A stretch of DNA of 63,709 bases, filler included, from Bigelowiella natans CCMP2755 (taxonomy: Eukaryota; Protista; Cercozoa), in assembly GCA_000320545.1 (NCBI GenBank). It is 5 parts of 5 records of this genome, joined end to end, with 100 filler letters (N's around TTAATTAATTAA, not from the genome) between each part and the next. Parts side by side here need not be neighbours in the genome. Positions count along the whole stretch, not along the records: positions 30,975 to 57,666 come from ADNK01002228.1; 4 more parts are not named here. One strand, 5' to 3'. Positions within the stretch are counted from its first letter, which is position 1, and each line of letters begins with the position of its first letter. The notes below the pieces were generated by a model that had not been told where the DNA came from, made no database searches, and saw only the letters and a program-made list of their open reading frames with translations. A program made the translations under genes and the position numbers. This document shows positions 30,975-54,656 of the stretch, piece after piece.

Positions 30975-31230
30975 GGAGATCTCCGAGAGTCTCTGAATCA
31001 ACTGAAAATGCCCCGGAAGCTCTCTGTGATCTGCCAAATGGCGAGCGTGCGCACGCACGCAAAGTTTTATTCATTTGGCGATTCGATCTTCCAAAAAGAG
31101 TGATATTCACGGTGAATCCCCCTTGTGTGGGATATCAGAGTTTGTGATGCTGATGGCACCTTATTTATATGGGTTGGCTTGGTAAATTCTAAGCGCCTAT
31201 GGATTTCTGCGTGTACTTATCTAACGTGTG

Positions 31231-31290
<60 letters not shown>

Positions 31291-32234
31291 TGTGTGTATC
31301 ATCAGATCCGTAGCTGACCTTCTGTGTATTGTCAATGCAATGCAAGGCAATGTAATCCACAAGCGAGAGCAAAAGTAAGTCACAAAGCAGCCGAATTCTT
31401 TCATCGACCACGACGCCTATATAACCCTAGCGCTGCTTGCCGCCAAAATCATCAAGAGATAGGAGACGTGAAACCATCTGTACATCCTGATATTGAAGGC
31501 TCTGATCTGAAAGACAAAGCGATATCGGCGCATGCGCAAACGTGTTGCTTGTTTGATTCTACTTGTTCCACAGCCCTCGTTTCACATCGGCCCTTCCCCC
31601 CTCCCCTTCCCACCCCTTTCAACGTCATTCTGTTGTAGATACCCTGTTCGCGAGTTCCTTAAATATCTCAATGAATACACGCCTGGAAACAGTGGAGAAG
31701 CAGGCGTCCGAAAGTTTGCGAATCGTCAGGTTACTTTGCAGATTTTATGTAGGATATTCGCCCGATGGATCTTGGTTAAGAGAGAAATTCTCTATCTTTC
31801 TCTCTCTCTCTCTCACTTTCGTACTCTCTCCACTAAATATCATGTGCAAATATTCCTATTTTACGATGCAGGTGAGCATTGTCTCAAACTCTGGAAAATA
31901 CATCAGTGCGGAGCGCAACGGCAAGGTTTGTGGCGCTGCATAAACGAGGCCTTCTGTTTGTCCCCGTACACACAACACATACGCTGGAGCGTCGCAAACA
32001 CAGGCACATTCGATTTTGCATTACATTGGTGTAATTCCACGTGTTTTCGCAGGTGGGCCTGTCGCAGACATCCAGCGAAAGCACCGTATTTGAAGTAGCT
32101 GTGATGGGAAAATATGTTGCTCTGAAGTCTCTCGCACGCAGCGGAGGTGGTTTACCGAAAATAACATCGTGAAAGGACTACGCCACAGATGCTAGTGTGT
32201 GTGCAGAATAGCCCCCCCATTCAATACACACGCA

Positions 32235-32271
<37 letters not shown>

Positions 32272-32527
32272 GCGCGCGCGCACAACACACACTGCGTATT
32301 GTACACAGTGTGCACTACGCACGGTCCACTCTGATGCATCTTGAATTCACACCGCAGGCGCTTCATGGCTGACATTTGACAAAGGCAACGACATAAAGCT
32401 TTCTGAATCCTGTGGAAAAGAACAAAAACTGGTGTTTAGACTGAAAATACAATGATAATCCCGCCTTCACCCCATGCAGAGATTGAATACGCGCGCGCGC
32501 GCGTGCGTGCGTGCGTGCGTGTGTGTA

Positions 32528-52899: not shown

Positions 52900-52933
<34 letters not shown>

Positions 52934-53525
52934 CAAATACAGTGCGCGTGTTCGCTCGCGCGCGCGCGCGTGTGTGTGTGTGTGTGTGTGTGCGTGTGAG
53001 TGTTTAATATATAAGGGGAAATTTTATGACTGCGTTTTAAAAGCGGATGTCGTTTTTGGTTTGATTTCGTTGTGTGAGGCATCGGAGTATATCTTTTCCT
53101 GGTGATCAACTTGATTTCCACTCAGGTCACACCAGAGCAGTTTAACATGGCCTTTTCCGACACGAAGTTCGTCATCGTCGGCAGCGATCAGAAGGAGCGC
53201 GAGCTTATTCCAGGCATGTGATTTAATGTGAATAGTAATTGAAGTACAAGGGCTTCAATATCTGAAATCATCATACGTGTTTTCGCATTTGTGTGTATGT
53301 GCGTGTGCGTGTAGTTGTCGGCATTCATAACTTGTTTGTGAAATGTCTATTGGTTGGTGCGGTGGTCTCTTTCTTTCGACTGTACGCAGGAGGCCGACGA
53401 AGGGCATTGCAGTGGGAAACTAGGAGGGAGTTCTGCGACCATATCGTTGCATATAGGAAGTCAGAGTTTAAGCAACAATGCGCAGCAATGCGACGAGGTG
53501 ATTTGATTATGTGTGAGAGCGCGAG

Positions 53526-53570
<45 letters not shown>

Positions 53571-54656
53571 CCTCTCTCTCCCCCCCCTCACTCATATCTG
53601 ATATGTTTTTTTTGTCATAGGTTTGGCTTGTGTTGTCCCGTATGCGTTGCTATCTTTGTTTACGTGGAATGAGCTAGAAGCACAAGTAAGCTTGAATGAT
53701 TTACGCACACTCACATACTCACACACACACACACACACAAACCAGTTATTGGATATAATACATTGTTGAAAGCGAATGCGGGCCGCTTATAACTTACACG
53801 CATATGTATGTGTGTGGTGTGTGCGGTTGTGTGCGTGTCTGGCTTGTCTAGGTATGCGGACGCTCTCAGATGAACGTCGATCTTCTCCAAAAAATGACGA
53901 AGTACAACGGGTGCTCGCCCAGCGACCGACACATCCAGTAAGTACCCACCCAAAAAAAGCAGCATTACATCGTGCGAATATGCAATGCCTAGTACCCACT
54001 CGAACTCTCATTTTTGCACAACACGCGCTACACCCACGCGCGCAGGTACTTCTGGCAGATCATGCGAAATCGGTTTGATGAGTTTGAGAAGGCCAAGTTC
54101 CTGAAATTCGTGTGGGGAAGAGCGCGGCTCCCCGTCAGGGCGGCGGACTTTCAGACGCATTTCACCATCAACCAGCTCGCTGCGAGTGCGCGAAACCCGG
54201 ACGCGTTCATGCCCATCGGGTACGATGATGACGATGATGATGATGATGATGATGGATGCCGTTATTGTCGCATTTAGGGATCGCTCTCATCAAGTTTTTG
54301 ACTCACTAAAACGTGATCAGGCACACGTGTTTCTTCTCGGTGGACATGCCAGCGTACACAAATCTCGACATTATGCATAAACGCCTTCTCTACGCTATCA
54401 CCCACTGCGAGGCCATCGATGCAGACTACGGGCCGAGGAGCATTCAAGCGGTACGCTCCACCAATCATACCACTCACAATGAATACGGTTTTTTGAAGTT
54501 GAGCTCGGATGCTGACAGCATCAGCTGCTGAGCTGTCAGTATTTGAAGTGTTCTTTTTAATTTAGAATATGCATTTGATCTATGTTTTCGAGAAGTATCC
54601 GACAAATACATATGTTGGCTATCCAGGTGCAGGATGAAGATAGTGACGATGATTGA
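30975..54656 (+). CDS. Giant HECT E3 ubiquitin ligase, large-HERC (HERC1/HERC2)-like with RCC1, SPRY, SUN/discoidin, LamG and UBA domains; 5' truncated; frame break near 49700
   Basis: About 35 short 5' exons (e.g. 32053-32146, 34635-34714, 36362-36772, 37032-37343, 37873-38106, 38865-39018, 40956-41036) join in phase to exon 41290-52320. The 3' exons 52567-52865, 53126-53213, 53390-53497, 53621-53685, 53852-53937, 54046-54219, 54321-54450 and 54627-54656 rebuild a full HECT domain (KFLGEGGIDAGGLYRE; FLGKLMGLAIRT; LIPGG; LFTWNELE; YFWQIM; FLKFVWGRARLP; GHTCFF with catalytic Cys at 54328-54330). Confidence 0.92.
31872..33251 (+). other. Fascin-like beta-trefoil region of the giant ligase (6 small exons)
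   Basis: VSIVSNSGKYISAERNGK|VGLSQTSSESTVFEVAVMGKYVALKSLARSG|GASWLTFDKGNDIKL...|VISPYADDEDEGSYFILKTLR|GTALWASD: three repeats of the V.L.S..G.YL.....G.V........E.F pattern. Confidence 0.55.
37590..38483 (+). other. CUB-like (ESxHPY-type) domain of the giant ligase
   Basis: IYESKHP|YVKN...ITIHNANSLTIHFDKKCETESSDDYLQF...KFSG [S/G/T-rich insert] WPGTIKI...WGFRIIVRG. Confidence 0.65.
41290..49700 (+). CDS. Giant exon, frame 1 segment (helical scaffold, SUN-1, SPRY-1, SUN-2, RCC1 propeller, LamG x2, UBA x2)
   Basis: 2956-aa ORF preceded by acceptor cctcctcag. Approximate domains: SUN/discoidin 42328-42830 and 44845-45345, SPRY 42958-43410, RCC1 repeats 45481-46615 (VYAWGYG.YG..GLG, H.......G.VY.WG), LamG-like 47190-47670 and 47914-48350, UBA 48385-48660 (LRLMGYPRHWCAKAI; LSLTGYPVSWCSRAL). 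Confidence 0.93.
49701..52320 (+). CDS. Giant exon, -1 frame segment (acidic linker, SUN-3, SPRY-2, HECT N-lobe start)
   Basis: Frame of ORF 50007-52553 is open from 49572. It encodes an acidic linker, KGIVYFVGS...WENPG...YTLRH...RNWRLEASDDG...LSGFEVYG, then SPRY (GKHYFAFKI...GDVIGIELDLD...YIPAVSL), then HECT. Donor G|gtagtg at 52320/52321. Confidence 0.92.
52647..52865 (+). other. PDZ-like insertion inside the HECT N-lobe
   Basis: About 73 aa, PRTVEFQAG...LKKGMRIIAIQGDSVATKEDAEAKLQAISSSSGPWSVTFAGR, lying between HECT segments QDVIDIDRLSFKLIENM and FNMAFSDTKFVIVGSD. Resembles the PDZ pattern L+.GD.I.aInG..V....dA...L.....v.l. Confidence 0.55.

What the first reader, a model, noticed from the sequence alone, without database searches (positions are those of the whole stretch)
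30975..54656. Giant (~5,300 aa) HERC-scaffold E3 ligase with a re-plugged set of accessory domains
Seen: hand-spliced scaffold motifs in order GSVADLL, VSVIMTALDRL, PFCIKVTARTF, ATLRTLKAHL, VQSEAAQVFAEGFEFF, LQRHLLS, AWLGLELFAAG, LLSIRILRDVLP, VMYARQA, SPFFQALL, WPWF, ADAQLV, then HECT. From memory these parallel human HERC2 (VVMAHLDRL, PFVVDI..TF, VQSAAQ.VL..G, WLQSSIFSGG, IMYARDA, SPFFKVL, WAWF, DEQLV). The inserted modules differ. RLD1 and RLD3 are absent; a fascin-like domain sits near the N-terminus; a CUB-like domain occupies the cytochrome-b5 position; SUN+SPRY pairs occur twice; LamG x2 and UBA x2 follow the single RCC1 propeller. Inference: an ancient helical chassis with exchangeable substrate-recognition slots, i.e. 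a modular ubiquitin-ligase system with an architecture I do not know from any described protein.
Basis: partly seen in the sequence, partly recalled or inferred. Interest (0 to 1): 0.82.

Follow-up and report, generated by a model that had tools for sequence, protein, structure and literature searches.

The report
Giant HERC2-like HECT ubiquitin ligase gene
This is one real, very large protist gene for a HECT ubiquitin ligase; its catalytic end and the front half of its helical backbone are related to animal HERC2, but different binding domains are plugged into it, which makes it an interesting variant of a known enzyme class and not a new kind of system.

Summary
The + strand of 31.3-54.5 kb holds one multi-exon eukaryotic gene. 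It has about 15 short 5' exons, a giant 8.4 kb exon and seven 3' HECT exons. It encodes a HECT E3 ligase of about 5,200 aa, and its 5' end is cut off by the edge of the piece.

- **One gene:** unannotated orthologues carry the same order in single reading frames, so the 5' exons belong to this gene. These are P0079 (5,333 aa), P0236 (4,920 aa) and metagenome locus L001.
- **HERC2 backbone:** profile-profile comparison with five HERC2 proteins shows colinear homology of the N-terminal helical solenoid. The blocks score E 4e-15 over about 900 columns and E 1.6e-9; a reversed-sequence control gives 0.086. The pre-HECT+HECT region scores E 4e-96.
- **Slot swap:** a CUB-like domain sits exactly where HERC2 has cytochrome b5.
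- **C-terminal scaffold:** its motifs (VMYARQA, SPFFQALL, WPWF) gave no significant HERC2 match.
- **Domains supported:** one RCC1 propeller, two SPRY, three SUN/F5-8C-like and two UBA.
- **Domains weak or unverified:** one LamG, the CUB-like fold and the fascin-like fold have only weak support; the first LamG is unverified.

Labelled relatives are all Rhizaria. Class I HECTs with LamG+SPRY, and HERC2 as a solenoid with inserted domains, are already described. Verdict: a new variant of a known kind, of moderate interest.

The parts
31307..31354 (+). 5' exon fragment (SVADLL), N-terminal helical region. The gene continues upstream of the piece edge.
   Evidence: Matches L001 residues 299-314. 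L001 has about 300 residues before this point.
31640..31741 (+). Exon: helical region leading into the first strand of the beta-trefoil-like module.
   Evidence: L001 residues 326-358, z 9.9 against shuffles.
31878..33270 (+). Several short exons for a fascin-like (beta-trefoil-like) module. Exon boundaries are not resolved. The last exon (33202-33252, FKISIKEDD...) is well supported.
   Evidence: L001 residues 350-500 have three G-x-Y-L-type repeats. Pfam Fascin E 0.04 on L001:1219-1701. Local alignments. The fold is not verified.
33927..33974 (+). Exon (VSVIMTALDRL), helical scaffold.
   Evidence: 75% identical to L001.
34637..34717 (+). Exon (PFCIKVTARTF), the scaffold block just after the RLD1 position of HERC2.
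   Evidence: HERC2 HMM positions 800-830; L001 63% identical; hhalign block.
34919..35056 (+). Exon (ATLRTLKAHL), scaffold.
   Evidence: P0079, P0236 and L001 HSPs.
35603..35698 (+). Exon (VQSEAAQVFAEG), scaffold.
   Evidence: L001 50% identical. Aligns with the VQSAAQ motif of HERC2.
36362..36796 (+). Exon with a poly-Gly/Glu tract and LQRHLLS, scaffold.
   Evidence: L001 E 3e-18; HERC2 HMM 1023-1095.
37053..37331 (+). Exon, scaffold.
   Evidence: L001 E 2e-14; HERC2 HMM 1093-1183.
37526..38498 (+). CUB-like beta domain in three exons (37526-37612, 37874-38041, 38382-38498), lying in the cytochrome-b5 slot of the HERC2 backbone.
   Evidence: hhalign places it opposite Mytilus HERC2 Cyt-b5 1231-1301. 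It is homologous to HERC2 3677-3774 (E 1.5e-8). An HMM of the domain hits all five HERC2 proteins. Pfam CUB E 0.032 in P0236.
38865..39041 (+). Exon (AWLGLELFAAG), scaffold.
   Evidence: L001 E 5e-11; HERC2 HMM 1319-1359.
40740..40856 (+). Exon, scaffold.
   Evidence: L001 56% identical, E 1e-6.
41314..49700 (+). Giant exon (open frame 41233-50157). The next ten entries are its sub-features.
   Evidence: 2,975-codon stop-free frame. Colinear with L001 at 39-41% identity.
42322..42828 (+). SUN/F5-8C-like domain 1.
   Evidence: More than 100 database proteins align here. Homologous to the HECTD1 SUN domain.
43000..43420 (+). SPRY domain 1.
   Evidence: Pfam SPRY E 5e-8 at the orthologous place in L001. 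Not detected by Pfam in the window itself.
43639..44397 (+). Helical scaffold block (LLSIRILRDVLP), homologous to the HERC2 region after the MIB domain.
   Evidence: HERC2 HMM 2024-2269, E 7e-9; hhalign E 1.6e-9.
44845..45375 (+). SUN/F5-8C-like domain 2, directly before the propeller.
   Evidence: Pfam Sad1_UNC E 0.0012; F5_F8_type_C in L001; many HSPs.
45481..46560 (+). The single RCC1-like propeller (RLD).
   Evidence: Pfam WD40_RLD E 5e-75. Best solved match is HERC2 RLD3, 3kci, E 2e-45.
46800..47650 (+). It is interrupted by a Lys/Glu-rich insert. Unverified.
   Evidence: No Pfam hit, no similarity to the second LamG, and the structure model was too poor to use.
47700..48340 (+). LamG/ConA-like domain 2 (weak support).
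   Evidence: Pfam Laminin_G_3 E 4e-5 (24.3 bits, below the 27.6 cut-off) at the orthologous place in L001. Conserved in P0010.
48415..48660 (+). Two UBA-like domains (48415-48504 and 48568-48660).
   Evidence: Pfam UBA_7 E 6e-5 and EF-Ts_N (a UBA-like fold) E 6e-4. UBA and UBA_7 in L001.
48700..49690 (+). C-terminal helical region (VMYARQA, SPFFQALL). No significant HERC2 match.
   Evidence: Conserved in L001, P0079, P0229 and P0236. hhalign against HERC2 gave nothing.
49690..49705 (+). Frame change from frame 1 to frame 0 within about 15 nt. It looks like a 1-nt indel (assembly error or real), not an intron.
   Evidence: Frames compared. L001 comparison brackets the switch.
49713..52320 (+). 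Continuation of the coding region in frame 0: acidic linker, SUN-like 3 (49968-50498), SPRY 2 (50829-51146), WPWF, pre-HECT helices (51165-52090) and the HECT start (52095-52320). A GT donor follows at 52321.
   Evidence: Pfam SPRY E 1e-15, F5_F8_type_C E 0.004 and HECT E 3e-8. HERC2 HMM E 5e-40. L001 50-72% identical. GT-AG intron 52321-52565.
52566..52868 (+). HECT N-lobe exon carrying an insertion of about 85-100 aa that is absent from the Pfam HECT model.
   Evidence: L001 38% identical. The L001 HECT match spans 388 residues against a 306-position model. Sequences.
53117..54223 (+). Five HECT exons: 53117-53215, about 53374-53505, 53620-53688, 53852-53938 and about 54050-54223.
   Evidence: L001, P0079, P0229 and HERC2 HSPs.
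54322..54531 (+). Last HECT exon, with the catalytic Cys codon (54328-54330, in H-T-C-F) and the stop codon at 54529-54531.
   Evidence: 85% identical to L001. Translation.

Best explanation
The window holds one real protein-coding gene of a protist. The labelled relatives are all Rhizaria, but the source organism itself could not be identified.

The gene encodes a HECT-type E3 ubiquitin ligase of about 5,200-5,500 residues. It belongs to the 'class I' group of HECT ligases, which includes the large HERCs and HECTD3.

**Relation to HERC2.** The catalytic HECT domain with its preceding helices descends from the same ancestor as that of animal HERC2. So does the N-terminal half of its alpha-helical solenoid, matching roughly HERC2 residues 800-2420.

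**Different inserted modules.** The folded modules on that backbone differ from those of HERC2:
- a beta-trefoil-like module near the N-terminus;
- a CUB-like domain where HERC2 has cytochrome b5;
- SUN+SPRY where HERC2 has MIB;
- SUN followed by one RCC1 propeller;
- one or two LamG-like domains and two UBA domains;
- a second SUN+SPRY pair before the HECT domain.

**How it most likely works (inferred).** The HECT cysteine, in the H-T-C-F motif, takes ubiquitin from an E2 as a thioester and passes it to substrates. Substrates are held by the lectin-fold and propeller modules. The UBA domains bind ubiquitin or growing chains.

**What is shown and what is inferred.**
- Shown here: gene integrity, domain content, homology to HERC2, and slot equivalence for the cytochrome-b5 position.
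- Inferred: catalytic activity, the substrates, and the role of each module.
For: **One gene.**
- L001 carries the N-terminal region and the start of the giant-exon equivalent in a single 1,879-codon open frame.
- L001 is colinear with every window exon at 34-85% identity.
- P0079 (5,333 aa) and P0236 (4,920 aa) are colinear as well.

**HECT and class I.**
- Pfam detects HECT.
- The catalytic H-T-C-F motif is conserved.
- The best solved HECT domain is HECTD3, E 7e-55, against HUWE1 at 6e-33.
- hhalign of pre-HECT+HECT gives HERC2 1e-46 to 1e-52, HERC1 6e-38 and HECTD1 3e-8.

**Backbone homology.**
- A HERC2 HMM hits the window's exons in colinear order.
- Family profile against HERC2 profile gives 445-1428 with 808-1902 (E 4e-15, probability 98.4%) and 2321-2530 with 2206-2423 (E 1.6e-9).
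- The reversed-HERC2 control gives a best E of 0.086.

**Slot equivalence.** Cyt-b5 of Mytilus HERC2 (1231-1301) lies opposite the family's CUB-like domain.

**Domains.**

**Module variation between orthologues.**
Against: - The C-terminal scaffold (after the propeller) has no significant match to HERC2.
- Only five HERC2 sequences and a shallow family alignment (Neff 2.4) were available.
- HECTD4/KIAA0614 is the class I family that the 2013 survey recorded in Rhizaria. It could not be compared, so the backbone may be common to class I as a whole and not specific to HERC2.
- A frame change at about 49.7 kb interrupts the reading frame in this assembly.
- Three fold assignments (beta-trefoil, CUB-like, first LamG) rest on sub-threshold hits or on nothing, and both structure predictions failed.
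- No expression or activity data exist.
Confidence: 0.8

Rival explanations
1. The family is not specifically HERC2-like. It is the protist form of another class I family, either KIAA0614/HECTD4 or the LamG3+SPRY families HECTHe1/HECTEx1. On this reading the helical backbone is an ancestral feature shared by all giant class I ligases.
For: - The 2013 survey lists KIAA0614 as the pan-eukaryotic class I family that includes Rhizaria. It lists HECTHe1/HECTEx1 as the only families with Laminin_G3+SPRY (PMC3673628).
- P0010, a distant relative with zf-RanBP+SPRY+RLD+UBA, shares several blocks with the family.
- HERC1 gives weak N-terminal matches as well (E 7e-5).
Against: - HERC2 scores better than HERC1 both for HECT and for the scaffold, by ten orders of magnitude.
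- No HECTD4 sequence was available, so this rival could not be tested directly.
Confidence: 0.35
2. The scaffold resemblance to HERC2 is convergent or compositional, a generic similarity between helical repeats. Only the HECT domain is truly homologous.
For: - Scaffold identity is low, about 15-25%.
- Individual HMM domain scores are small (0-27 bits).
Against: - hhalign gives E 4e-15 over 895 colinear columns, against 0.086 for the reversed control.
- Six separate window exons hit the HERC2 HMM in the correct order.
- Shared short motifs occur at matching places.
- HECTD1 and MYCBP2 gave no scaffold match.
Confidence: 0.05
3. The locus is a decaying pseudogene or a mis-assembly and does not make a working ligase.
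For: The frame changes from 1 to 0 within about 15 nt at about 49.7 kb, with no room for an intron.
Against: - It is the only disruption in more than 15 kb of coding sequence.
- About 960 codons stay open after it in frame 0, from the switch at about 49.7 kb to the stop at 52551-52553.
- The downstream domains, the catalytic Cys and the splice sites are intact.
- A single-base assembly error is the simpler reading.
Confidence: 0.07
4. The 5' exons (31-41 kb) belong to a different gene, and the ligase starts at the giant exon.
For: The short exons are separated by long, repeat-rich introns, and no transcript data are available.
Against: Three orthologues carry the same N-terminal blocks fused to the rest in continuous reading frames.
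Confidence: 0.03

Closest known systems
HERC2 (animal and choanoflagellate giant HECT ligase)
   Same: - It is a giant alpha-helical solenoid with folded domains inserted into it.
- It has colinear homologous scaffold blocks: HERC2 about 800-1900 and 2200-2420.
- It has a homologous CUB-like beta domain.
- Its RCC1 propeller is most like the HERC2 RLDs.
- Its pre-HECT helices and HECT domain are homologous (E 4e-96).
   Different: - It has one propeller, where HERC2 has three.
- It has no Cyt-b5, MIB-HERC2, CPH, ZZ or DOC domain.
- It has instead a beta-trefoil-like module, three SUN/F5-8C-like domains, two SPRY, LamG-like and two UBA domains.
- The CUB-like domain sits in the cytochrome-b5 slot, not between RLD2 and RLD3.
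- The C-terminal scaffold is not detectably similar.
- Labelled members are Rhizaria, not Holozoa.
Class I HECT families HECTHe1/HECTEx1 and KIAA0614/HECTD4 (Grau-Bove et al. 2013, PMC3673628)
   Same: - They are class I HECT ligases of protists with SPRY and, in HECTHe1/HECTEx1, Laminin_G3 domains.
- KIAA0614 was recorded in Rhizaria.
- A class I protein from P. infestans carrying an RLD is mentioned.
   Different: - The survey records Pfam domain lists only.
- It treats RLDs in such proteins as independent gains.
- It confines the HERC2 family to Metazoa plus choanoflagellates.
- It does not describe a shared solenoid, SUN-like, CUB-like or UBA content for these families.
HECTD1
   Same: The SUN (Sad1/UNC-like) domain is homologous (E 1e-19 to 1e-22).
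   Different: - Its HECT domain is only distantly related (E 3e-8).
- It has ankyrin repeats and a MIB domain.
- It shows no scaffold similarity.
HECTD3
   Same: It is the best solved-structure match for the HECT domain (E 7e-55), and it is a class I member.
   Different: It is a small protein (861 aa) with a DOC domain, and has no giant solenoid.

Membership tests
HECT E3 ubiquitin ligases | C-terminal HECT domain | tested here: met
   Pfam HECT on the window (E 3e-8 for the first 72 positions). Full-length HECT in the orthologues L001 (2e-57) and P0236 (1.5e-66). The remaining window exons align to these.
HECT E3 ubiquitin ligases | Catalytic cysteine in the C-lobe | tested here: met
   The Cys codon is at 54328-54330 within H-T-C-F. 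The context is identical in L001.
HECT E3 ubiquitin ligases | Ubiquitin thioester formation and transfer | not testable with these tools
   This needs biochemistry.
Class I HECT (large HERCs, HECTD3, KIAA0614 and relatives) | HECT domain nearest to class I members | tested here: met
   HERC2 1e-46 to 1e-52, HERC1 6e-38, HECTD1 3e-8. The best PDB HECT is HECTD3 at 7e-55, against HUWE1 at 6e-33. No tree was built.
Class I HECT (large HERCs, HECTD3, KIAA0614 and relatives) | SPRY domain, which is exclusive to class I according to PMC3673628 | tested here: met
   Two SPRY domains.
HERC2 family | Homologous helical solenoid backbone | tested here: inconclusive
   Met for the N-terminal half (E 4e-15 and 1.6e-9). 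Not detected for the C-terminal half.
HERC2 family | Three RCC1-like domains | tested here: not met
   There is one RLD only, in the window and in all orthologues.
HERC2 family | Cyt-b5, MIB-HERC2, CPH, ZZ and DOC domains | tested here: not met
   None was found by Pfam in the window, L001 or P0236. The SUN domains show no similarity to the HERC2 DOC domain.
HERC2 family | Grouping with HERC2 in a HECT phylogeny | not tested
   No HECTD4, HECTHe1 or HECTEx1 sequences were in hand.
KIAA0614/HECTD4 | Sequence or phylogenetic affinity to HECTD4 | not tested
HECTHe1/HECTEx1 | Laminin_G3 plus SPRY plus HECT | tested here: inconclusive
   SPRY and HECT are met. Laminin_G_3 is seen only below threshold in L001 (24.3 bits against a 27.6 cut-off).

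The most novel reading that the evidence does not exclude
The HERC2-type solenoid is far older than Holozoa. In Rhizaria-like protists it has been turned into a cytosolic 'lectin-array' ligase.

The backbone carries eight or more carbohydrate-binding-type folds: three galactose-binding-like/SUN domains, LamG/ConA-like domains, two SPRY domains, a beta-trefoil, and a jacalin domain in one orthologue. These would recognise glycans or glycoproteins exposed in the cytosol, for example from damaged phagosomes, prey or symbionts, and mark them with ubiquitin.
Probability: 0.1. Interest if true: 0.75.

Novelty: new variant of a known kind. Interest (0 to 1): 0.42.

Why it matters
The result moves the origin of the HERC2-type backbone outside animals and choanoflagellates, where the HERC2 family has so far been confined.

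It also gives a natural experiment in domain swapping:
- The same helical chassis holds a different folded domain in at least one demonstrably equivalent slot, cytochrome b5 in HERC2 and a CUB-like domain here.
- The chassis carries varying accessory modules among orthologues.

This bears on how giant E3 ligases gain new substrate specificities, and on the reading of still unannotated parts of human HERC2. One example is the CUB-like domain between RLD2 and RLD3.

It is not a new class of system, and no function has been shown.

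Tried and rejected
- **Word searches:** three searches of the large protein collection found no orthologue. The length window tops out at 5,206 aa, and RCC1 and SUN words saturated the candidate lists. Only P0229 came out. The full HMMER search was what found the family.
- **AlphaFold2, N-terminal region:** L001:1219-3921 as a single sequence gave mean pLDDT 38.6, which is unusable.
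- **AlphaFold2, LamG region:** a three-row alignment (A4) gave mean pLDDT 34.8. Foldseek on that model returned only noise. No fold claim rests on these models.
- **Alignments with full-length database proteins:** A1, A2 and A3 were smeared or misplaced and were not used.
- **PDB sequence search:** the CUB-like and trefoil regions gave nothing.
- **Metagenome scan:** a search for more N-terminal orthologues found none.
- **Exact look-up of the window's 2,956-aa ORF:** it is not on record.
- **Atlas:** one unhelpful hit, to HECTD1 at 0.79. New sequences could not be read because the machine was busy.
- **Homology tests without signal:** SUN against the HERC2 DOC domain, the first LamG against the second, LamG regions against bacterial Laminin_G_3 proteins, and the C-terminal scaffold against HERC2 and HERC1.
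- **20-nt GT..AG 'intron' at the frame change:** rejected, because comparison with L001 confines the switch to about 15 nt.
- **Accession-based paper searches for the source organisms:** they found nothing.
- **Joined coding sequence:** All exons were searched one at a time by reference, so no whole-protein search or fold of the window's own product was made.
- **Human sequence:** the contig is not human.

Full report
**What is in the sequence**

The piece (30975-57666) is eukaryotic. GC is about 40-49% in the intron-rich 5' part and 54-62% across the large exon.

The + strand has a 2,975-codon stop-free frame at 41233-50157. A 993-codon open frame follows at 49572-52550 in another phase. A canonical GT-AG intron lies at 52321-52565.

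Nearly every intron carries a dinucleotide microsatellite of 12-28 copies.

The contig is not human. Every exon was handled by reference on its own, so no whole-protein search or fold of the window's own product was made.

**Domains in the window**

Pfam finds the following in the window:

| Domain | E-value |
|---|---|
| RCC1 propeller (one only) | 5e-75 |
| SPRY (second copy) | 1e-15 |
| HECT, start only | 3e-8 |
| UBA_7 | 6e-5 |
| EF-Ts_N (UBA-like) | 6e-4 |
| Sad1_UNC | 0.0012 |
| F5_F8_type_C | 0.004 |

The best solved relative of the propeller is HERC2 RLD3 (3kci, E 2e-45). The SUN-like domains are homologous to the SUN domain of HECTD1 (E about 1e-19; hhalign 8e-22).

**Relatives**

Three word-index searches found no orthologue. 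The length limit and common RCC1 and SUN words were the reason.

The full HMMER search with window:42277-45459 found 160 representatives below 1e-30. Most of them share only the SUN-like domain. The true family members are these:

| Member | Length or type | What it covers |
|---|---|---|
| P0079 | 5,333 aa | full length |
| P0236 | 4,920 aa | near full length |
| P0229 (locus L002) | 2,754 aa | RCC1 to HECT |
| P0149 | 2,525 aa | part |
| P0124, P0204, P0168, P0141, P0097, P0098 | fragments | parts |
| L001 | metagenome scaffold | the gene almost without introns |

None has a functional name. The labelled ones are all Rhizaria:
- Cercozoa sp. M6MM (MAG, hypothetical protein);
- the foraminifer Nonionella stella;
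- the vampyrellid Leptophrys vorax.

All are only about 25-45% identical to the window, so the source organism stays unknown.

**One gene, not two**

L001 is colinear with every window exon at 34-85% identity. This runs from SVADLL (31307) through the giant exon to the last HECT exon.

Its N-terminal part and the start of the giant-exon equivalent lie in one 1,879-codon open frame. P0079 and P0236 are colinear too. The 5' exons therefore belong to the ligase gene.

L001 has about 300 residues before the SVADLL block, and the piece has only about 330 nt before it. The 5' end of the gene is therefore cut by the edge of the piece.

**The frame change**

Frame 1 turns into frame 0 between the residues I-I-E-K-K-Q-E and D-E-C-S-K-A. 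Comparison with L001 brackets the switch within about 15 nt at about 49690-49705.

There is no room for an intron there. It is a 1-nt indel, most simply an assembly error, because everything downstream is intact. The frame switches in L001 at other places are N-gaps in tandem repeats plus one ordinary intron.

**Test of the HERC2-backbone claim**

An HMM built from five HERC2 proteins (P0001-P0005) hit the window's stop-free segments in colinear order:

| Window | HERC2 HMM positions | E-value |
|---|---|---|
| 34625 | 800-830 | 0.0075 |
| 36554 | 1023-1095 | 2.2 |
| 37053 | 1093-1183 | 0.039 |
| 38901 | 1319-1359 | 0.21 |
| 39942 | 1457-1486 | 0.34 |
| 43639-44397 | 2024-2269 | 7e-9 |
| 45907-46560 (propeller, best hit) | 4020-4228 | 4e-29 |
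| 51621-52325 | 4307-4538 | 5e-40 |

The HECT exons follow in order.

Profile-profile comparison used a P0079-anchored family alignment of 39 rows against the HERC2 alignment:

| Family positions | HERC2 positions | E-value | Note |
|---|---|---|---|
| 445-1428 | 808-1902 | 4e-15 | probability 98.4%, 895 columns |
| 2321-2530 | 2206-2423 | 1.6e-9 | |
| 99-257 | 161-342 | 2e-4 | weak |
| 4861-5326 | 4405-4866 | 4e-96 | pre-HECT+HECT |

Controls:
- The reversed HERC2 alignment gave a best E of 0.086.
- HECTD1 and MYCBP2 gave no scaffold match.
- HERC1 gave only weak N-terminal matches (7e-5 and 3e-4).

The region after the propeller (family 3360-4860) gave nothing significant. The best match was E 0.019, at the WPWF region opposite the stretch just before RLD3. 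Some HERC2 sequences do have SPFF or WAWF shortly before RLD3.

**Slots**

Cytochrome b5 of Mytilus HERC2 (1231-1301) falls exactly opposite the family's CUB-like domain. In the window this domain is coded at 37526-38498, and the flanking helices align on both sides.

SUN1+SPRY1 lies between the blocks that flank MIB-HERC2 in HERC2.

The CUB-like domain is itself homologous to an unannotated HERC2 domain between RLD2 and RLD3:
- hhalign gives E 1.5e-8.
- An HMM of the domain finds it in all five HERC2 proteins, at 2e-9 to 4e-6.
- Pfam CUB gives E 0.032 at that place in P0236.

So this module was moved on the backbone, not imported from elsewhere.

Orthologues differ in modules:
- P0236 has a jacalin-like lectin domain (E 1e-8).
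- P0079 and P0236 have two tandem SUN domains before the HECT region.
- The beta-trefoil-like module is present in the window and L001 but absent from P0079.

**Weak or failed fold assignments**

- **Fascin-like module:** L001 residues 350-500 show three G-x-Y-L-type repeats. Pfam Fascin gives E 0.04. The window encodes it in several short exons between 31.88 and 33.27 kb whose boundaries I could not fix.
- **Second LamG:** it has only a sub-threshold Laminin_G_3 hit in L001.
- **First LamG:** it has no support.
- **Structure predictions:** both were too poor to use, with pLDDT 38.6 and 34.8. Foldseek gave only noise.

**Family placement**

The HECT region is nearest to HERC2, then HERC1, and far from HECTD1. 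HECTD3 is the best solved HECT domain. Together with the two SPRY domains, this places the protein in class I of Grau-Bove et al. 2013 (PMC3673628).

That survey already lists the following:
- class I families with Laminin_G3+SPRY (HECTHe1, HECTEx1);
- a class I protein from P. infestans that carries an RLD;
- KIAA0614/HECTD4 in Rhizaria.

The same survey confines HERC2 to animals and choanoflagellates and treats such RLDs as independent gains.

A 2026 paper describes HERC2 as a very large helical solenoid bearing inserted domains (PMC13748646).

The protein fails the HERC2 domain definition, because it has one RLD and no Cyt-b5, MIB, CPH, ZZ or DOC. I do not file it as a HERC2 family member. 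It works like one and shares part of its backbone. I could not compare it with HECTD4, and that is the main open rival.

**Mechanism**

- **Shown:** an intact HECT domain with the catalytic cysteine (codon 54328-54330).
- **Inferred from the known chemistry of HECT ligases:** the cysteine accepts ubiquitin from an E2 and transfers it to substrates.
- **Inferred from the known roles of the domain families:** the propeller, SPRY, SUN-like, LamG-like, CUB-like and trefoil modules recruit substrates or adaptors, and the UBA domains bind ubiquitin.

The substrates are unknown.

**Verdict**

This is a real, single, giant class I HECT ligase gene with a partly HERC2-homologous backbone and a different set of inserted modules. 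It belongs to an unannotated family whose labelled members are Rhizaria. It is a new variant of a known kind and of moderate interest.

Noticed in passing
window 31236-41187 and 52902-53580: Nearly every intron of the gene carries a pure dinucleotide microsatellite of 12-28 copies (CT, TG, AC, GA or AT), often close to an exon boundary. The density is unusually regular and may be a hallmark of the source genome.
   Followed up: partly
window 49690-49705: A single frame change (frame 1 to frame 0) lies inside otherwise intact coding sequence, with no room for an intron. It is probably a 1-nt assembly indel.
   Followed up: yes
window 52620-52868; L001:16750-17050: An insertion of about 85-100 aa lies in the HECT N-lobe. 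It is conserved in L001 (38% identity) and absent from the Pfam HECT model. Its sequence pattern (G-M-R-I-I-A-I-x-G-D) recalls a PDZ-like fold. No family hit was found.
   Followed up: partly
P0001 3677-3774 and the same place in P0002-P0005: Animal HERC2 has an unannotated CUB-like beta domain between RLD2 and RLD3 that is homologous to the window's domain at 37526-38498. MYCBP2 (about 2020-2070) and P0010 give weak matches too.
   Followed up: partly
P0085 and many of P0078-P0227: The SUN/F5-8C-like domain of this gene is very widespread in environmental protist proteins: 1,239 representatives fall below 1e-10. P0085 carries five copies plus ankyrin repeats, a protein kinase, EF-hands and a polycystin channel domain.
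   Followed up: no
P0236 2145-2267: One orthologue carries a jacalin-like lectin domain (Pfam E 1e-8) just before the SUN domain that precedes the propeller. The window has no counterpart.
   Followed up: partly
window 54224-54254: A (GAT)10 repeat starts directly after the exon that ends at 54223. In frame it would read as poly-Asp and then stop, so it is taken as the start of the last intron.
   Followed up: no
window 54532-57666: No convincing open reading frame lies on either strand downstream of the stop codon. The stretch is AT-richer and holds ATTATC-type and AT repeats, so it is presumably 3' UTR or intergenic.
   Followed up: partly
L001 about 5780-5880 and 13680-13790: The metagenome scaffold has runs of N inside tandem peptide repeats (D-S-K-T and A-E-P-P). 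These runs, not introns, cause its apparent frame changes.
   Followed up: yes
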